In this document: positions 751 through 55,744 of the stretch, one piece after another
Layout: every line of letters starts with the position of its first letter
Numbering within the stretch: position 1 is the first letter of the stretch
Source of the DNA: Utricularia gibba
Lineage: Eukaryota > Plantae > Magnoliophyta
Length of the DNA: 64,000 bases
Assembly (NCBI GenBank): GCA_002189035.1
Contig: CM007990.1
Span: forward strand, 1,054,001-1,118,000
Direction: 5' to 3'
Notes under the pieces: generated by a model
Seen by the model: the letters and a program-made list of their open reading frames with translations, nothing else
The model's database searches: none
What the model was told of the DNA's origin: nothing
Position numbers and translations under genes: made by a program

Positions 751-3700
751 ATGGATTGTGACCTGCATGAAGTTCAGCAAGTCACATCTGGTCGCCTGAG
801 GGGGTTTATTTCAGTATATTATCTGATCAAGATGCTGTAAGTTCTCATAATTCTATCCTATTTCTCTATGGGTTTTCCCAGTTTCAGCAATGAGACTTAA
901 TTAATTCGAAACTGTAACGGAGAATTGCTTGAGTTTGTTTCTGTATTTGTGCATAGGAAAAGATTTCCACGATGGTGGTTAACAGTCCCAATGAAGTGTC
1001 TGATGCTGCATTGGGACTCCCTACTATGAATGCCACAGAATGCATTACATGCGGTGCTACAAACTCAAGGGATTGTGAAGGTAAGCCCTGGGATCTTTAA
1101 CTTCATAGATTCTTTTTATTGACTGATGCTGAGCAATGTTGCAGGGCATTTTGGTAAGATCAACTTCCCACATACAATTCTCAATCCTTACTACATGTCA
1201 GAAATTGCACAAATCCTCAATAAAATATGTCCTGGCTGTAAAACTCTTCGGCGTGGTAGAACGAAGGTTAGCAGAAAATTCATACTATAGCATAGAATAT
1301 TAGCCTGTTTACATTTGAATACCTAAACTAATGCTTAGCTGCTTTGCTTTTAACGAAACCTAATGTTTCATTCAGAAAGCTGATTCTGAATCAACCCAGT
1401 TGCTGCAGAGTTGCAAATATTGTAGGGTGAGTTGATGAGGAGTTTCTGTTCATTTCATGAGATTCACTATAAATGACTTTGTTAGACATGTTTTTCAGGG
1501 GAATTCTTCTGATGGCTATCCCAGAATGAAGTTTAGAGTTTCTTCAAAAGATGTATTTTCAAGGACTGCTATTATTGCACAAGTTGACGACAAGATGTTG
1601 AAAGATGGCCACACCAGAGGTTTGGCTCCTGACTATTGGGATATAATTCCTAACGATTCTGCTCAAGAACAAATCGGCTTGCCATCAATCCGAAGAGTTC
1701 TATTTCCTTACCAAGTAAAATTGCAATGAGACTTTATCTTTCTGTGACTGTTTGACAACAATTCTCCTTACTGTTCGTTCTCTAAATAAATCCAATTTTT
1801 TTTTACTTTTTTTTTTAAATTACACTCAAAGAAGTTTGATGTTTGTCCAATGTTTTCGGCTTTTAAAGTTGGAGTACTGTGGAGGAACATCATACCTATA
1901 GTACTCTAATGTCTCTTGTTTTTAATTGCATATTGTAACACTCATAGTTTTGAATAAAGCATTGCATCATGTGTTATCCTATACCTCTAAAAATAGTGAA
2001 GTCCCAACGGCTATTTCATGCATTTTGATTGTACTATTTATGCAGGTTTATAGCATTCTGAAAGATGTATCTCCAAGTACCTTGGAAGAAGTCAAACGGA
2101 AGAACTCAATATTTTTGAACTCCTTGCTCGTTACTCCAAATAGTCATCGAGTGAGAGAATTGGGTCTTCATATAACTGTTGTAAGTGAAATTCTTTGGCT
2201 TTTGGTCTGATGCAAAATGTAATAGTGAAGCTATAGATGGGTATCTGCCCTGACCATTTTGATATTTTACTTTGTTAGGATGAAAGTACCGCCTTGTACA
2301 AAAGGCTTGTTGATTTCAGAGGTACTCCACATGAACTAAGTGTTCGTGTTATGGAACGATATAAAATTTCAAAGGCAAGTTCAAATATAAAAATGATTTT
2401 ACTTGTCTTGAATTCATCTGTTTGAAAGAGATGTCAATCATAAAGCTCTCCTTATTGCAGCTACGCTCAGAAAAATTGTCTGCTCTAGGAAGGATTTTTG
2501 AAAAACAATCATCAAATGATTCTGTTTCCAGTTCTTCCGGGCTTAGAAATGTAAAAGACCTCCTGCTTGGAAAGCGGGGCGATAACTCTTTTCGTTTGGT
2601 GGTAGTTGGTGATCCAAGGCTTAAAGTTTCTGAGATTGGATTGCCATGTGAAATTGCAGATAGTGTGCTGATTTCTGATTATATCAGTACACTGAACTGG
2701 GATAAATTGGAATCATGCTGTGATTATATGCTTTATCGAAGGGGACTCCTCTCTTCTTTTTCTGTAATCAGAAATGGACGGAAAATTCGTGCATTGTCTA
2801 AGGACATGATTCAAATAGGTGATTGTATAAGCAGGCCACTTGTTGATGGTGATATTGTGTTGATTAATCGACCACCCTCTATCCATCAGCATTCCCTTTT
2901 AGCTTTGTCAGTCAAAGTTCTCCCTGTAAAATCTGCTGTGGCTATCAATCCACTTACATGTGCTCCCCTGCGAGGTGATTTTGATGGAGATTGTCTTCAT
3001 GGATATGTACCTCAATCCTTGAACACAAGAGTTGAGCTCAGTGAACTTGTTTCATTAAAAAGTCAGTTAGTTGATGGCCAAAACCATAGAAATTTGATGT
3101 CCCTTAGTCAAGATAGTTTGACTGGTGCCTACCTTATTCTTAACAATTCTGTCACCCTGAATAAGGCTGAGATGCAGCAGCTGCAAATGTTTTGTTCCTT
3201 TAAGCTTTTATCACCAGCCTTAATCAAGTCTGCTTCCCAGGACTCCCGATGGACAGGAAAACAATTGTTCAGCCTGCTTTTGCCAGATGATTTTGAATTC
3301 ATTTCTTCCAGTGATGTCCATATCAGAAAAGGAGAGCTTGCATTTTCTTCTGCTGCCCCGTTATGGCTGCGTGATAGCAGTGAAAACCTCTATCAGGGCC
3401 TTATCAAACATTGTGGAGACGGAGCCCTTCGTTTCCTTAATACTGCACAGGAAGTTTTTTGTGAATGGTTGACAAAACAAGGTCTCAGTGTTTCACTCTC
3501 TGATCTTTACCTTTCCCCTGATCAACATTCTCGTAAGAATCTTTTGGATGAAGTATATCAAGGCCTGCAGGAAGCAGCAAGGTTATCAGATGTAAGTTTG
3601 CTTATGGTGGACCAGTACAAGGACTTTCTTGTTGAAAATTCTGAAGAGGGGGAGAAGCTGGAAAATATTGTAAAAGAGCAAATATCGATTGCACCATATA

Positions 3701-6700
3701 CAAAGGCAGAGCTTTTCCAGGTTTCAGTTTCTGCGTCAAAGTTGGTGTTCTTAGATATGCAAAAACTTGTCTACAAGCACTCTCGCTATAACAACTCATT
3801 TATCAGTATGCTAAGGGCTGGGAGCAAGGGGAATCTGCAAAAACTTGTACAGCATAGCATGTGTTTGGGATTGCAGCATTCCTTAGCTCCACTGTCATTT
3901 TCAATTCCACGTCAACTCAGTTGTGCCGCATGGAACAATGAAAAGCAGTACTCTGATGTCCAGAAGTCACTTTATACGCATGATGCACCAACATCATTTA
4001 TTGCCTGTTCCATAGTCAAAAATTCTTTCTTGGAGGGCTTAAATCCTCTGCAGGCATTTACACTTTCATTAACATCACGTGACAGCTCGTTTAGTGGTCA
4101 TGCTGATGTTTCTGGGACCCTATGTCGAAAGCTGATGTTTTTCATGCGAGATCTGATAGTTGGATATGATGGAACTGTGAGAAACTGTATTGGGAATCAA
4201 GTTGTACAGTTTAACTACAACACTGCGGGTATCTCTGAAATGCCCCATGATGCTGTTATGGGTGGACATCCTGTGGGCTCGTTGGCTGCATGTGCCATTT
4301 CAGAAGCTGCTTATAGTGCCCTAGATCTTCCAGTCAGTTTTTTGGAACCGTCGCCTTTGCTTGGTCTGAAGGTCCCCATTCCTTTTATATATACATGATA
4401 CAATTCACCATAGCTATTTTCTATCATCCAGCAAATGTTTTATGTTATCTATTCTGATATTTCTATATATGCACACTGACTCTTATTAGTGCGTAAATAT
4501 TATGATGTAGAAAGTTCTGGAGTGTGGAGTAAAGAAAAGTCGAAATAAAACTGCATCATTGTACTTGTCCAAGAGACTGAGAAGATGGTCAAATGGCTTT
4601 GAGTATGGGGCTTTGCAAGTTAAGCATCATTTAGAAATATTGCTCTTCATGGAAATTGTTTCTGAAGTCAGGATATGGTACTGTTTACGTTACTTGTCAT
4701 GGATCTCTTTACCATTACTTATTTAGATAAAAATGCTTACTTGAAGTATTTGATCTTCAAATTTTAGCTTCTCTGAGCTGTTAAATGGCTGCACATACTC
4801 CACTCCATGGGTCTGTAATTTTTATATAAGCAAGGTACCATTCTAAAATGCAACCAACTTTTCCTGTATTTATGTTCTATTGTCGGACTGCTTTTATTAC
4901 TACAGGAACTTGCCAAGAAGGGACGTCTGAGTCTTCATTCCGTTATAAATACTCTTCGTAGGAATACTGAACAAGCCCGGTTGAAGTCAAAAAAAATGTG
5001 TCTTCCAAGACTGCAGATTACCGGCAAGTAAGTCTGCTTTCATTAACGCCAAGTCTGCAAAGTTTACTGAGGAGTGTTACTTCTTCTGACATTATTTCCT
5101 CATCTGCAGATTCTGCTCTGAAGCTGACGATTTCAATAAATCCTACTTATTTTGCATATCAGCCAGATTATCCACCAGCTATGGTGAATCTGATGTGAGC
5201 ATCCTTCGTGATATGGTGGTACCGGTTCTCCTTAAAACTGCAATAAGAGGTTCCTAACTGAGATAATGACTTCTTCTTACACTATTTGCATCTTTCTACA
5301 TACATTGCTCACCTCCTGAAAAGTTGCAAAACAAGAAGCTTGTGAGCATCGTGAATATGTCTTTTTTTAACAGATGCATCGTTTGTGTTCGAAAAATGAA
5401 TGAATTTGATGTCATGGCACTCCTCTCAGTCGTGATGTATTCTTGGCTCTATTATCACCTGATATATGCCGACATAACTGCCACATGGAAAAACCCTTTT
5501 GCAAAAAAATATTTGCTGTCCTATGCAGGGTTTCCAGAGTTCAGAAAGGTTGATATTGTGTGGAAAGATGGACCAAATCGTAAAAAATATTCGTGGCCCC
5601 CTTCAGGAGAACTCTACTTGCGAGTTTCTTCATCTGTTCATTGTGATGGAGATGCATTTTGGAGCATCCTGGTGGAAAATTGCCTAGGGATCAGGGAACT
5701 AATTGATTGGGAGCGTAGTCATCCTGATGATATTCTTGATTATAGCAATGCCTTTGGAGTTGCCACTGCTTGGCAGTTTTTTTGCAATGTGAGTTGCTTC
5801 CGTTGGGTGGAAAGAATGCCCTGCTTTTTCCTCTCTAGTTGTCACAAAAAAAAAATGAACTTTTGTATTTCGATGCAGAACTTGAATTCTTCCATTTTGG
5901 ATGCTGGCAAGACAATCCTTCCTGAGCATGTTACCATCACGGCGAGTTGCCTAACTGCAACTGGACAGTTTACTCCACTAAATGCGAGGGGACTGGTAAA
6001 CCAAAGAAAGGAAATCGGTGTTCATTCTCCATTCAGCCATGCCTTCTTCCTGGTACGTAGCCACTCAATTTAAAAGAGATTCTACCTTTTTTTCCTCACT
6101 GTATCTGGTTGCCTTCAGAACCCTAGTGATTGTTTTGTGAAAGCTGCAAAGAGTGGACAACATGATGAACTCAAGGGAAGTGTTGAGGCGCTGTCATGGG
6201 GTCAATATCCTCCCATTGGAACTGGCTCTCAGTTTGATATCATCTATAGTGGGAAGGTAGTGGTTCTAGATACTGCAGCCTCTTTATCAAAACTAAAATA
6301 TTTCATGTGCTTGCAATCCTGTGAATTGGATAACTTGCAAGTATAGATTGCCTGCTCAAGCTGACTGCCTCAAAGTCACTGCAGTTTTTCTGATTTTTCA
6401 TGTTTCTTGATTCCACAGCTTGCTTAGAACGTCCTTTCATCATTTGAGTTTGCACTAATGCAACCTTCCTTTTCCCTTGTCATCAGGCACATGAGCCATC
6501 AAAGCCTGCAGATGTATACGACTTGTTGCGATCCCACATCGGGCGAGCGAAATCAAATTTTACAGACAGGAACCTACCCATCAAACCTGTCAACCTGTGT
6601 CGCTTTAATAGAAAGCCATATCACCACCTGCTGGAGAGAATGCCTTCCCAGAACTTCTCAGTTCTTGGGATCAAGAAAATCTCCCAGAAACTAAGTCGCA

Positions 6701-7173
6701 TTCTGAAAGAGTATGCCACAGGAAAAAAAAAAAAAAAAACTCTTCTTTTGTTCATGATTCTATCTTCACTTTGTTGTTCTTAATGATGCAGGTACCCCAA
6801 GGATCGTCAGCTGAGTGAAGAAGACAAATCTGCGGCCTTGACAGTTCTTCAGTTCCACCCACGACGGCCGGAGAAGATCGGATCCGGCATTCTCGAGATA
6901 AAGGTACACTCAGAACCCTTGCTGAGATAAAAGTACACACACTCATGCCTCCATCTCCTCATCTTCTCCCAGGTTGGCCTTCACCCGGACTACAAAGAAA
7001 CATGCTTCATTCTGATAAGAACAGATGGTACAGAGGAGGACTTCTCATACCACAAATGTATAATCAATGCTCTAGAGATCATGTCGCCCAAAATGGCGAA
7101 AGCGTATCGATCCAGATGGAATAACTCCACGCGCCGCCCCCGGACTGAAGGGGTTGGCCGGAATATGCTGTAA
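751..7173 (+). CDS. NRPD1: RNA polymerase IV largest subunit, multi-exon (about 18 exons), with one apparent -1 frameshift in exon 1
   Basis: Spliced exons traced by hand from ATG 751 (MDCDLHEVQQ) to TAA 7171-7173. N-terminal Zn motifs CITC...CEGHFG and CPGC; CKYC...YPRMKF motif; NRPPSIHQHS; metal-A site RGDFDGDCLHGY (Pol IV type, not Pol II NADFDGD); C-terminal DeCL-like domain (FHP...KIG...CFILIRTDGTEEDFSYHKC). The G5 run at 800-804 needs one more G to reach the exon-1 donor at 837. Confidence 0.95.
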
Positions 7174-7216
7174 CAAGGCTGAGACCTGTCGTAGAAGAAA
7201 GACTTGATGCTTTTTG

Positions 7217-7328
7217 ATGGATAGCCGGAGCTTCCTTTTGCTGCTTCCCCTATAGTTTCTTGGCCCAGAGGATCGGCCAGGGAGTTCTAGGGGAAGTAGC
7301 AACGGGAAAGCTCTCAAAGGCTATCCAT
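7217..7328 (+). ncRNA. pre-miRNA-like stem-loop in the presumed NRPD1 3' UTR
   Basis: Arms 7217-7265 and 7275-7328 pair by hand at 47 of 49 left-arm positions (40 Watson-Crick, 7 G:U). There are 2 U-C mismatches, 1-nt and 4-nt bulges, and a 9-nt loop (7266-7274). Expression and processing are not shown by the sequence. Confidence 0.65.
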
Positions 7329-9221
7329 ACTTCGTGCTATTGATGCTTTTGCTTTCATGGTCTGATGACGTTCGTTCTTCTGGTTTCATGAACCTTTTCT
7401 TTTTCTTTCCTTTTTTTTTTAAAAAAATTCTCTATTTTATTAATTTTATAAAATATATAAAAATACGACTTTTATTGTATTAAAAGTATTTTTTAAGAAC
7501 TATTAAATGATATTTTGGGAAAAAAAATATTTTATTTATTTTGAAATGAAAATTTGATTTTATTAATAATTTGTGTGAAAAATAAAAAAAATAGAATTAG
7601 GTAGGACATCTCACCCGTCGGGTTGCTGTGTCAAGGATGCCACCCGGATCCCACCCGATCCGACCCGCACTCGGCAAGACGGGTAGGTGCATTTAAGAAG
7701 GCTGCCGAGGTTTCTTTCCTTCCTCTATTTTAATGAATTTTTTTAAATGACAAAATTAATCTAATTTAATGAATTAATAATTCATTATAAAGGGTCTGTT
7801 CTGTATCATGATTTTTTGAATGATTCTATTTAATTTTTGAATATTTTAATCTTTAGTTGTTTTGTAATAAATTCAAAAATTCAGATTATGTGATTAACTT
7901 TAAAATTATTGAATTTCTTGAATTTATGTTTTAAAAATTAAATAAAAAATATACTATTTACTTTTTATTTATTAGAAAAATACATTGTATCATTAAATTA
8001 AATTATATAATAATTTATTATATTCAACTTTATAATATATGGTTTACTTTATTAATTTATAATATAATTATATATTATTCTACGAAACATTTTTACAATT
8101 TTAAACTGATTTTATTCACATAATTTTAAAACTAATTATATTATATATAATCTAAAGTATAGCTTTAAATTGACCCAAATTATAATTGAAATTGATTTTA
8201 GGAATTTTTTAATTTTTTATCAAAAATATGAATATTCTAAAAAAAGAAGCCGCGGCGGAGATTTCGATGTGGTGATGTGGGGGCGAGAATGGCTGGCTGG
8301 CTGTCCGCCCATTCAGAAAATGTTCGCGTCGTGTCACTTTCTATTTTGACCCTCTCATTTTCTTTTTTATTCCATTTCTACCCACATTTTCACCCTGTGA
8401 GATTGAATTCGTTCTAAATATGAAAATACAGAAAGTATGGGGTGCTGTGTGTTATTAAAACGGAGATGAACTTGAACCAATTTGAAATAATTTATACTTC
8501 TACAAAAATATTTCAAAAACTATTAAAAATATTTATAAAAAAGTACATAGAAGCAAATATATACTTTATCCAAAGCTAGAGTTATATTTTAAAATTATAA
8601 ATTCAATTTAAATTTATTGGGTTCAATCCCTTTCAATAATAATTTTTATTATTTTAAATATAATTAAAAATGATTAAAATCATTATAAAAATAATTACTC
8701 TAAATTCATAACAACAAAAAATAATTAATTCTCAATTTATACCATTATCGCATAGTTTCAATAAATCACAGAGATGCCCCTCATGTTCCAGGAAATTAAC
8801 ATTGAGGCCTAATTGGAAAGCCAACGCTATGGAGAATCAAATTAATCTTGAGTGGTAACTGGTAGGGTTCTGGTGGGGGAAGGTTTGTGAGTGGGATTCG
8901 GAGGAGTCGGAGTGGAGGAAGTGGGGGATTTAGGTGAAATTAAGGAAATGGGAAATTGCTGCAATGCCCAATTGTTCCGTGAATTTTCTTTTTGCTGGTT
9001 TCCTATTTATAACGACAGAGTGGAGCCATTAAAGCATCACGTACAGCCCCGCAAATCTTCTTGGCCTGAGTTGTCCGTCCTGCTTGGGTTCTCTTGCTTT
9101 GCTTTGTTTGCTTGCAGGAGTATTCTTCCGTGATACTGCGACAGCGGGTCTGGGGTTTGGGGGGCTATCTTGATCGACTTCCTTATTACGTGCACGGACA
9201 TCTTTCCAACAGCACGAAGCG

Positions 9222-53276: not shown

Positions 53277-55744
53277 TTATGAATCAAAAGCCGCCGGGCA
53301 GAGTTCGTCGGAGACGCCACGTGCACCGGCCGGCAGCCACGAGCCATTTCTGTAACAAAGAGGCGCCCTTCTGCTAATAGAAAACAAAGGAGATGGATGT
53401 CATCAGATTGCTCCCAGCTCAGTGCGGCAGAAAGAAATGCTTCTTAAAAGATGGTGTGATCATCACTTGGGAAGTTTGTTGCAGTTTGCAGCAGCGAAAC
53501 CGATCCGGTATCGCTCGTTGTCGTAGACTACTAACTTGTCAAGCATAGAGATGTCTGCAAATTCAAGAATCCAATACTCATAGTTCAGGAACTGAGAAGT
53601 GGAGATGAAGAAACAGGATGGACTAAACGTCTGTTTAGTGCAGCTCCAACTTCAAAAGATTATTTCTAAAAGTGATTCTCGAGCAAAACATGCGTTGCTT
53701 TTATTCCACAGATAGCTAAAACAGTAAAGTGCTTCTAAAAGCACTTCTTTAGAGCTGTTTTCTGGAGCTGTACCAAACAGATGCTAACTCATACCTCCAA
53801 TCACGTTGGTGCTCCCCAGTCCGACTTCACTGCCATTCAGGATGCCTAAGCAGACATTTCCCCGTTCCTGAACCGGGAATTCGTCGAATCAAATGTTCCA
53901 GAGCAACGAATGTATTACCATACCAAAGATGAAGAGGGTGCTCACTGTGACTACGAGATAAGATTGTGGGGGTAGCTGAAACTGCGCATTTTTGGCATTG
54001 GTGAAGCTCAATCCCAGAGGCTTGAAGAAGATGGACACATCATTGATGGACTTAAAGGGCTTTTGCCCCTTCCAGCAAACAGGAAGGGAGCTGTCTGCTG
54101 CATCTTTTAGCTGCTTTCCGCTTATGCTCTCCTTAATCTGAAACCATACGCAAACATCTGCATCCTCTCGCAGGTAAAACACTACTGAAATACGGTTTAG
54201 TTCTAACCAAAGAGACGAGGGTGCTGTACGCTTTAGAGCTGAGGTAAGTGTATGTGCTTCCACTGTCAAAAACCACTGTAAGGCCTCTCAGTTTCGTTGC
54301 TTTTCCATCTATCAGAACGTCTGCAGGGCCTAAAGAGTAATGCTTCCTGATAGCACAATGGCGTGTAGTTCCATTAGGTTCAGTTGGCTACACTTCGTGC
54401 TTGGAATCAGAATGCAGAATATGAACACTTACGACTGGCTGGATGCAGACAGCCACTTGATCCCAGATGTGGGGAGAAAGCCATCTCCAAAAAACAAGTA
54501 GCCTTGGCCCTGTCCACTCAAGCAGTGGCCGATGATGTTTTTTGTGAGGCCCAAGCTGCTGAGCTGCGACAAAATGCTCGACTTTCCGATCCCAAGACCA
54601 AGAACTCCATCAGTAAATGGGAGATGAGATGAACCATAAACTTCTTGGTCATACCCACATCTGCAAATGCAGAGAGAATACTGCTACCTGAGGTAAAAGA
54701 AAAGGAAGAGAAGGTTGAGGGTAAGGTAAAGGAACTAGAACAGCAAACCCCTTACCCAAATCCCAACTGTGGTGCAGATGTTTTTCCATTGGAAAATTTA
54801 AGAGGGAAGTAGTCTTTGAGCAGCACACCCAATGACATGCCGGAATCAGCATACTCAACTTCATAGTCACACTGCTCTTGGGGTGCTTTGCATTTAACAT
54901 CACCAGAGTTTTGAAGAGAAACACACAGTGGATCTTGACATCTAAGAGGGTTTTTGCTTGGCCTATAAGGAGGGTGAGGAGCCTGAAAACATAAGGAAGG
55001 CATCAAGACCTCCATGAATGAGTAGTCTTTCAACTCAGGGTGAAAGTGAATTTAACTGAATTGCATTTGATGCAAGGCGCATCACACTGGATCCAAGTAA
55101 GGTCACTCCCAGTGTCTATATCAAGAAAGTAAGGCTTTGGAGGTTGGCCAATGTTGATAGTCACATAGTAGTATCTGAACCAAGATTATGCAAAATGATA
55201 ACAATCAGAGAGCAGTAGAGAATAATCCCATCAAGATTGAACTCCATTCAAATTTGTACATTTTAAACAAGGAAGCAAAGCAACAGTAATCTGCAATGGA
55301 AATGAACAAGTCCATTGTGTGTATGTTAAAAAATCCCTGCTGTTACACAGACCCCAAGTGAGAAACACTGAACTATTTTAATCAAGAAACACTAACACAG
55401 TCGTAAGGTCAACATCTGAACGACAGCGCCAAGAAGATATAAAGGATTAAGCTTTGAACCCAACATAGAAATCAACCAATGGAAACCTAGAAAGCTAAAA
55501 GAAAAAAGCAGCAAAAAACGCCAATCAAATTCTCTATAACAACAACAGTACAATCGCAGAAAACAGAGAGAGGGAGGGACCCTGTAGGATAAACATTTCC
55601 AGAAACAGGAAAGATCACCGAGGACGCAGAAACTCCTCCAGATTTGAGGGGTTCATCGGAAATGCCCCGGAAAAGTAAAGAAGCCCCTCCAGGCCAAGCC
55701 ATCAGGAGCAGCACCACCGCTCTGAGGTGCATGTTCCGATGCAT
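53277..55744 (-). CDS. nucellin/Asp1-like A1 aspartic protease, multi-exon
   Basis: Signal peptide, GNVYPTGYYYVTINIGQPPKPYFLDIDTGSDLTWIQCDAPC, CDYEVEYAD, DGVLGLG, second site VFDSGSTYTY, NVCLGILNG, VYDNER. The last exon (53277-53371) is inferred by splicing and is less certain. Confidence 0.92.
53627..53784. mobile_element. 158-bp Tourist (PIF/Harbinger-type) MITE in an intron of the aspartic protease
   Basis: 22-bp TIRs ACGTCTGTTTAGTGCAGCTCCA and TGGAGCTGTACCAAACAGATGC (4 transition differences), TAA target-site duplication at 53624-53626 and 53785-53787, internal palindrome AAGTGCTT-CTAA-AAGCACTT. Confidence 0.85.

What the first reader, a model, noticed from the sequence alone, without database searches (positions are those of the whole stretch)
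7217..7328. Strand-asymmetric pre-miRNA-like hairpin in the 3' UTR of the Pol IV largest subunit
Seen: 44 nt after the NRPD1 stop there is a 112-nt fold-back with 47 of 49 paired positions. On the + strand it has 7 G:U pairs and no A:C mismatches. A neutrally decaying DNA inverted repeat should give both types about equally, and the MITE TIR at 53627 in this window shows 2 G:U and 2 A:C. The asymmetry points to selection on RNA structure in the same orientation as the NRPD1 mRNA. It is GC-rich, shows no TSD, and I recognise no conserved miRNA in it. Established: small-RNA machinery genes carry feedback hairpins or sites (miR838 in a DCL1 intron, miR162/DCL1, miR168/AGO1, Drosha cleavage of DGCR8 mRNA hairpins). 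Inference: DCL cleavage here could remove the poly(A) end of NRPD1 mRNA and/or release a new miRNA, linking DCL activity to Pol IV dosage. This would be a possibly undescribed autoregulatory module for RdDM.
Basis: partly seen in the sequence, partly recalled or inferred. Interest (0 to 1): 0.85.

Follow-up and report, generated by a model that had tools for sequence, protein, structure and literature searches.

The report
Conserved hairpin ending Pol IV mRNA
The mRNA for the largest subunit of plant RNA polymerase IV ends in a 112-base RNA hairpin shaped like a microRNA precursor, kept at the same spot in every order of asterid flowering plants sampled except Cornales, so it probably regulates this gene-silencing enzyme, though its cutting by Dicer is untested.

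Summary
The hairpin at 7217-7328 is real: 47 pairs, 7 G:U, no A:C, MFE -71.6 kcal/mol on + versus -58 on -.

Spliced RNA-seq contigs from 4 runs in 3 studies run from the last NRPD1 exon through the whole hairpin. They end 30-45 nt after it, so it lies at the extreme 3' end of the mRNA.

The same hairpin sits just after the NRPD1 stop in Handroanthus, Sesamum, Primulina, a Lamiales-type cDNA contig, Solanum, Ilex, Camellia and Lactuca. The flanking UTR does not align and the proteins are only 56-70% identical. Cornus has at most a decayed remnant.

- Eight stem pairs show compensatory changes (0/500 shuffles reach this).
- Two G:U pairs are invariant.
- G:U outnumbers A:C by 40 to 3.
- A 22-bp core is conserved in sequence, flanked by about 14-bp stems conserved mainly in structure. 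This is the footprint of a plant MIRNA precursor.

It is single-copy, matches no Rfam family at threshold, and I found no paper describing it.

Dicer cleavage, a mature miRNA and Pol IV feedback remain inferences, because no small-RNA data could be examined.

The parts
6973..7173 (+). Coding part of the last NRPD1 exon (C-terminal DeCL/DUF3223 domain). Stop is TAA 7171-7173 as the window reads, or TGA 7146-7148 if the extra C seen in all RNA contigs is real.
   Evidence: GT..AG joint 6901/6971 (cut +2) in RNA contigs. Translation. tblastn to the DeCL ends of orthologues. C insertion behind 7136 in 4 of 4 runs (table 4).
7217..7328 (+). The whole conserved stem-loop.
   Evidence: Covariance model R1 scores 118.4 bits on + against 53.9 on -.
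7217..7229 (+). 5' side of the lower stem. It is conserved in sequence within Lamiales and only loosely structured in other orders.
   Evidence: Alignments A2 and A5. Per-species folds.
7230..7251 (+). 5' core, 22 nt, consensus GCTTCTTTTTGCTGCTTCCACT. It is at least 8/9 identical at every column. The predicted guide-like strand is about 7232-7252 (5' U, weakly paired 5' end).
   Evidence: Column conservation. Alignment A5. The guide prediction is inference.
7252..7265 (+). 5' side of the upper stem. Its sequence varies but pairing is kept by compensatory changes.
   Evidence: columns 38-51 with 67-80.
7266..7274 (+). Terminal loop. It is variable in length and sequence among species.
7275..7288 (+). 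3' side of the upper stem.
7289..7311 (+). 3' core, consensus AGTGGAAGTAGCAACGGGAAAGC. It pairs with the 5' core and holds the invariant G:U partners.
7312..7328 (+). 3' side of the lower stem, with the 4-nt bulge at 7315-7318.
7358..7373 (+). Zone where the RNA contigs of four runs end. This is the probable poly(A) site region, 30-45 nt after the hairpin.
   Evidence: table 8: contig ends at 7358, 7359, 7370 and 7373.

Best explanation
The element is a functional RNA stem-loop transcribed as the last structured part of the NRPD1 (Pol IV largest subunit) 3' UTR. It has been inherited at least since the common ancestor of Ericales, lamiids and campanulids.

Its layout matches a plant MIRNA precursor. 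A roughly 14-bp lower stem and a roughly 14-bp upper stem plus small loop flank a 22-bp core that is conserved in sequence.

The most likely mode of action is as a substrate for a Dicer-like enzyme, of the DCL1 type. A cut in the stem would separate the mRNA body from the last 30-45 nt and the poly(A) tail, and so lower NRPD1 output. It could also release a 21-22-nt duplex whose 5' arm strand (5' U, weakly paired 5' end) would be loaded into an AGO protein.

Shown: the structure, the strand, its place in the mRNA, and its conservation with covariation. Inferred: Dicer processing, the small RNA, and feedback on Pol IV.
For: - Fold and strand bias. In all nine species the + strand folds 6-15 kcal/mol better than the - strand (for seven; R1 strand scores for Camellia and Lactuca).
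- In the mRNA: spliced contigs with four GT..AG introns removed run unbroken from 6971 to 7358-7373 in 4 runs from 3 studies. Five RNA runs hold every sampled word of the hairpin. An intronless cDNA contig of another Lamiales-type species carries the hairpin 105 nt after its stop and ends 50 nt after the hairpin.
- Orthologues just 3' of the NRPD1 stop: 75-125 bits for the six orthologues that also built the model (Handroanthus, Sesamum, Primulina, the cDNA contig, Solanum, Ilex), so those scores are partly by construction. Independent hits are 71.6 bits for Camellia and 58.8 for Lactuca. blastn found the first six on its own.
- Conservation starts and stops exactly at the stem base while the flanks do not align.
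- Covariation: 95.7% of cells are paired. Eight pairs have double-sided changes against 2.4 in shuffles (0/500), and slid controls give 1-3.
- G:U at 29/89 and U:G at 22/96 are invariant in 9/9. Overall there are 40 G:U cells against 3 A:C.
- Core versus stem conservation matches the 15-17-bp stem footprints described for plant MIRNAs (bioRxiv 10.1101/129684).
- Precedents for such loops are reviewed in PMC12825306: miR838 in a DCL1 intron, a DCL1 5' UTR stem-loop, and Drosha cleavage of DGCR8 mRNA.
Against: - No small-RNA, degradome or DCL-mutant data could be examined, so processing is unproven.
- The stem is unusually perfect and both arms are about equally conserved. A structure- and sequence-specific protein site would look the same.
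- The core sequence appears in no paper's main text and not in the held supplements of a potato small-RNA atlas. That is odd if an abundant conserved miRNA came from it in heavily sequenced crops, although supplements are mostly not searchable.
- No conserved target site was found inside NRPD1 itself.
- Outside Lamiales the lower stem is interrupted by internal loops, so base-to-loop measuring is less clear there.
Confidence: 0.5

Rival explanations
1. It is a cis-regulatory stem-loop that is read by a double-stranded-RNA-binding or sequence-specific protein rather than cut by Dicer. It would control NRPD1 mRNA stability, translation, localisation, or cleavage and polyadenylation just downstream.
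For: Both arms are near-invariant and the stem is almost perfect. The position 30-50 nt before the transcript end recurs in two species. No reported miRNA with this sequence was found and no Rfam family matches.
Against: The 14 + 22 + 14 bp layout with a sequence-conserved 22-bp core is what MIRNA precursors show. A 46-bp perfect-ish stem in a Pol II transcript is expected to be accessible to plant DCLs (general knowledge). No candidate binding protein is known.
Confidence: 0.33
2. It is an ordinary trans-acting miRNA gene that merely uses the NRPD1 transcript as its host. Its conserved function is to silence some other gene, with no meaningful effect on NRPD1 itself.
For: Sequence conservation of the core, beyond what pairing needs, is typical of miRNA-target constraint. 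The predicted 5' arm strand has a 5' U and a weak 5' end (inference).
Against: Every excision necessarily destroys one host mRNA, so a cis effect is hard to avoid. Linkage to NRPD1 has been kept in all eight other species sampled. No target could be sought genome-wide with these tools.
Confidence: 0.12
3. It is a neutral inverted repeat or a transposon (MITE) remnant that happens to lie in the UTR.
For: Inverted repeats are common in plant UTRs and the window holds other repeats.
Against: It is single-copy in the window and in every locus. It sits at the same site relative to the NRPD1 stop in five asterid orders. It shows compensatory changes, invariant G:U pairs and sharp conservation borders. 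There is no target-site duplication.
Confidence: 0.02

Closest known systems
miR838 hairpin in intron 14 of Arabidopsis DCL1, and the DCL1 5' UTR stem-loop (PMC12825306)
   Same: A fold-back inside the transcript of a small-RNA pathway gene. Its excision by DCL1 yields non-productive host fragments and so gives negative feedback.
   Different: Here the host is Pol IV (NRPD1), which does not itself process hairpins. The element is in the 3' UTR of the mature mRNA rather than an intron or 5' UTR. It is conserved in every asterid order sampled except Cornales rather than within Brassicaceae. Processing is not shown.
Drosha cleavage of hairpins in DGCR8 mRNA (animals; cited in PMC12825306)
   Same: A conserved hairpin in a silencing-factor mRNA whose cleavage destabilises the mRNA.
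   Different: That case is a different kingdom and enzyme. The DGCR8 hairpins lie in the 5' UTR and start of the coding region (own knowledge) and form a self-loop of the Microprocessor. This element would couple Dicer activity to a different pathway, RdDM.
Conserved plant MIRNA precursors with 15-17-bp lower or upper stems (bioRxiv 10.1101/129684)
   Same: A sequence-conserved core of about 22 bp, flanking stems conserved in structure, a variable loop, and strand-specific G:U pairs.
   Different: No mature small RNA is documented. The pairing is more perfect than in most conserved MIRNAs. It is hosted in a protein-coding 3' UTR. It matches no Rfam miRNA family: the best hit is mir-5408 at 41.6 bits against a threshold of 90.

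Membership tests
Plant MIRNA locus (Axtell and Meyers 2018 criteria, own knowledge) | A single-stranded fold-back under 300 nt, with a candidate miRNA/miRNA* duplex having at most 5 mismatched positions, of which at most 3 lie in asymmetric bulges. | tested here: met
   The fold-back is 112 nt. The core duplex 7230-7251 with 7289-7311 has one U:C mismatch, one 1-nt bulge and a few G:U pairs.
Plant MIRNA locus (Axtell and Meyers 2018 criteria, own knowledge) | Precise excision: small-RNA reads of 20-24 nt forming a duplex with 2-nt 3' overhangs, replicated in independent libraries. | not testable with these tools
   The run index works on 31-letter words and cannot find small-RNA libraries.
Plant MIRNA locus (Axtell and Meyers 2018 criteria, own knowledge) | A conservation footprint of a miRNA/miRNA* core plus a 15-17-bp processing stem below or above it. 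| tested here: met
   The 22-nt core is at least 8/9 identical. The upper stem of about 14 bp is kept by covariation. The lower stem of about 14 bp is conserved within Lamiales.
Any described RNA family in Rfam 15 | A score at or above the family's gathering threshold. | tested here: not met
   The best hit is mir-5408 at 41.6 bits against 90. All hits are generic hairpin matches.
MITE or other transposon inverted repeat | Multiple dispersed copies, terminal inverted repeats with a target-site duplication, and no positional orthology across distant taxa. | tested here: not met
   There is one copy in 64 kb and one in each orthologous locus. The position is syntenic in nine species and there is no target-site duplication.
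Autoregulatory hairpin of a silencing-factor mRNA (DGCR8 or DCL1 type) | A conserved hairpin that lies within the mature or precursor mRNA of a silencing-pathway gene. | tested here: met
   It is present in the spliced NRPD1 mRNA and in a cDNA contig of a second species. It is conserved in nine species.
Autoregulatory hairpin of a silencing-factor mRNA (DGCR8 or DCL1 type) | RNase III cleavage of the hairpin lowers host mRNA or protein. | not testable with these tools
   This needs degradome data, DCL mutants or reporter assays.

The most novel reading that the evidence does not exclude
In asterids, perhaps for about 100 million years, the amount of Pol IV may be set partly by Dicer-like cleavage of a pre-miRNA-like hairpin at the very end of the NRPD1 mRNA. 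This would link the cell's hairpin-processing capacity to the polymerase that starts RNA-directed DNA methylation. It may also release a still unannotated conserved small RNA.
Probability: 0.35. Interest if true: 0.85.

Novelty: new variant of a known kind. Interest (0 to 1): 0.75.

Why it matters
Pol IV starts the 24-nt siRNA pathway that methylates transposons, and little is known about how its own dosage is controlled. Feedback hairpins or miRNA sites are known for DCL1, AGO1 and animal DGCR8, but I found none described for Pol IV.

A structured element kept at the same place in the NRPD1 mRNA from tea to lettuce, tomato and sesame is a concrete handle that can be tested directly. Deleting it, or looking for its small RNAs in existing crop data sets, would show whether Dicer activity and RdDM are coupled. 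Even if it is a protein-binding element instead, it is one of the more deeply conserved 3' UTR structures in a plant silencing gene.

Tried and rejected
- Rfam scan: only sub-threshold generic miRNA-hairpin hits.
- Copies in the window: none, so the MITE reading was dropped.
- Literature: NRPD1 with miRNA, UTR, hairpin, stem-loop or feedback gave nothing on this element. The core sequence as RNA or DNA words in 8.4 million full texts gave no relevant hit. Supplements of three Solanaceae small-RNA papers: only the potato atlas had text held, and it had no hit.
- Self-targeting: a scan of every locus for sites complementary to any 21-mer of the arms found only one site, in lettuce. The orthologous site in five other species is a poor match, with 5.5-7.5 mismatch-equivalents (the script stopped before the remaining loci). 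I therefore rejected a conserved self-target in the coding region.
- Peptide motifs that a coding target site would encode were absent from all 372 polymerase subunits fetched.
- Two metagenome scans for the core: no hits.
- Olea NRPD1 could not be fetched. Loci L002 and L003 do not reach the 3' end of the gene.
- Coding potential was rejected. Hairpin lengths differ among species by numbers that are not multiples of three.
- No small-RNA run could be laid.

Full report
**Observation**

Positions 7217-7328 fold on the + strand into a single stem-loop of -71.6 kcal/mol (z = -8.95; none of 200 dinucleotide shuffles does as well). The reverse complement reaches only -58.0.

Counting the pairs gives 47 pairs, of which 7 are G:U and none are A:C oppositions. 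There are also two U:C mismatches, a 1-nt bulge, a 4-nt bulge and a 9-nt loop. The sequence occurs once in the 64-kb window.

**Gene context**

- The 658-codon exon at 2422-4395 carries the Rpb1 domains and the DFDGD metal-binding motif, and its best hits are NRPD1 proteins.
- The last exon encodes the DeCL/DUF3223 end of NRPD1.
- The nearest available NRPD1 is that of Genlisea aurea at 70% identity. The window is from a fast-evolving Lamiales plant, probably Lentibulariaceae.

**The hairpin is part of the mRNA**

I laid Logan contigs of four RNA runs from three studies on 5800-7900. They show removal of GT..AG introns at 6051/6118, 6254/6485 and 6901/6971, and the contig pieces also skip 6711-6791. 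From 6971 the contigs are unbroken through the stop codon and the whole hairpin, ending at 7358, 7359, 7370 and 7373. No contig covers anything further downstream.

Five RNA runs hold every sampled word of the hairpin. Three runs of a further study hold 63%. That fits the C7248T difference seen in the one of these runs that was laid (X12).

So the stem-loop sits 30-45 nt before the transcript end. All four contigs also carry one extra C in the C-run at 7137-7141. This would move the stop from TAA 7171-7173 to TGA 7146-7148, and the hairpin is 3' UTR under either reading.

**Conservation**

I fetched NRPD1 loci of other plants by exact protein look-up and searched their 3' flanks. The hairpin was found on the + strand shortly after the NRPD1 stop in eight other loci, as located by blastn and by covariance model R1:

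| Species | Locus and coordinates |
|---|---|
| Handroanthus impetiginosus | L001:23519-23631 |
| Sesamum alatum | L006:18353-18465 |
| Primulina tabacum | L004:18457-18568 |
| Intronless cDNA contig (SRR32856091) | L009:4639-4754 |
| Solanum dulcamara | L005:18121-18240 |
| Ilex paraguariensis | L007:34289-34402 |
| Camellia lanceoleosa | L010:16345-16458 |
| Lactuca sativa | L011:9094-9197 |

- R1 was built from the window plus the first six loci in the table, so their scores of 75-125 bits are partly by construction.
- Camellia (71.6 bits) and Lactuca (58.8 bits) were not in the model and are independent hits.
- The same sites score only 35-57 bits on the - strand.
- In the cDNA contig the stop is at 4534 and the contig ends 50 nt after the hairpin, the same layout as in the window.
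- Between the window and Handroanthus, identity is 87.5% over exactly the 112 nt of the stem-loop. The UTR on both sides does not align, and the proteins are only about 69% identical.
- These taxa span Lamiales, Solanales, Aquifoliales, Asterales and Ericales.
- Cornus florida (Cornales) has only a weak match 440 nt after its stop (13.9 bits, E about 1). It shares two short core strings but does not fold better than shuffles. I read it as a possible decayed remnant.
- Plants outside the asterids could not be tested.

**Evidence that the conserved object is an RNA structure on the sense strand**

On an independent MAFFT alignment of the nine sequences (A5), RNAalifold predicts 31 shared pairs.

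- 95.7% of cells are paired.
- 8 pairs have changes on both sides, against 2.4 ± 1.1 in column shuffles (0 of 500 reach 8) and 1-3 when partners are slid by 1-3 columns.
- G:U at columns 29/89 and U:G at 22/96 are present in all nine species.
- Across all cells there are 40 G:U against 3 A:C.
- An invariant G:U is an A:C mismatch on the other strand, so the selected molecule is the + strand RNA, that is the NRPD1 mRNA. In each of the seven species folded, the + strand is 6-15 kcal/mol more stable than the - strand.
- The within-species variant C7248T turns a C:G pair into U:G, which again keeps the pair.

**Architecture**

Column conservation shows a 22-nt block on the 5' arm (window 7230-7251) and its partner on the 3' arm (7289-7311). 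These are at least 8/9 identical at nearly every position.

Above the core, about 14 bp of upper stem vary in sequence but keep pairing through compensatory changes, and the loop is free to vary. Below the core, about 14 bp of lower stem are conserved within Lamiales and are looser elsewhere.

A sequence-conserved core of miRNA/miRNA* length, flanked by structured segments of about 15 bp, is the footprint reported for plant MIRNA precursors processed from the base or from the loop (bioRxiv 10.1101/129684).

In the consensus, the 5' arm strand starting UUCUUUUUGC has a 5' U. Its 5' end is paired through U:A and the two conserved wobble pairs, whereas the other end of the duplex is G:C-rich. By the usual asymmetry rule (own knowledge) the 5' arm strand would be the one loaded. 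This is inference.

**Mechanism**

The best-supported reading is that this is a substrate for a Dicer-like enzyme embedded at the end of the NRPD1 mRNA. Any cut in the stem would detach the poly(A) tail and the last 30-45 nt from the body. That should destabilise the message, and the excised duplex may also act in trans.

Comparable loops are known (PMC12825306):
- miR838 in a DCL1 intron
- a DCL1 5' UTR stem-loop bound by DCL1
- miR162 targeting DCL1
- Drosha cleavage of DGCR8 mRNA

What differs here is the host. Pol IV does not process hairpins, so the loop would couple Dicer capacity to the siRNA/RdDM polymerase rather than being a self-loop.

I put about 0.5 on Dicer processing. I put about 0.33 on a non-cleaved protein-binding element controlling stability, translation or 3' end formation. 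The remainder goes to a purely trans-acting hosted miRNA. A neutral repeat is effectively excluded.

**Weaknesses**

- No small-RNA or degradome data could be examined. The run index cannot find small-RNA libraries, and only one read-laying run was allowed.
- The core sequence is in no searchable paper text, nor in the held supplements of a potato small-RNA atlas. No Rfam family matches.
- This supports novelty, but it also means that an abundant miRNA from this hairpin has not obviously been noticed in well-studied crops.
- No conserved target was found within NRPD1.

**Verdict**

The interpretation of RNA-level selection within the NRPD1 mRNA is supported. The Dicer and autoregulation part remains a well-motivated hypothesis that can be tested directly.

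Noticed in passing
window 7136-7148: All four RNA contigs have six Cs where the window has five (7137-7141). With six Cs the NRPD1 frame ends at TGA 7146-7148 (...RRPPD*) instead of TAA 7171-7173. This is either a homopolymer error in the assembly or a strain difference.
   Followed up: partly
window 7248: A contig from a 2024 study (run X12) reads T instead of C inside the conserved 5' core, turning a C:G pair into U:G. Three runs of that study hold only 63% of the hairpin's words, which fits a strain variant that keeps the pair.
   Followed up: partly
L011:8125-8146 (Lactuca NRPD1 exon); orthologous site window 6131-6160: In lettuce the hairpin's 5' arm is complementary, with 13 contiguous pairs and about 3.5 mismatch-equivalents, to the NRPD1 exon that encodes the conserved CFVKAAKSG motif. 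In five other species the same site matches poorly (5.5-7.5). It could be chance, an Asteraceae-specific self-target, or a trace of origin by inverted duplication of that exon.
   Followed up: partly
L008:35164-35280 (Cornus florida): About 440 nt after the NRPD1 stop there is a weak match to the hairpin model. It shares TTCTTTTTGCTG and AAGTAGC in the right order but has no stable fold (z = -1.5). It may be a decayed orthologue in Cornales.
   Followed up: partly
window 6753-6821: One short RNA contig (run X6) crosses the intron-exon border at 6792 unspliced. This suggests some retained intron or pre-mRNA for the intron that holds the A-run at 6723-6739.
   Followed up: no
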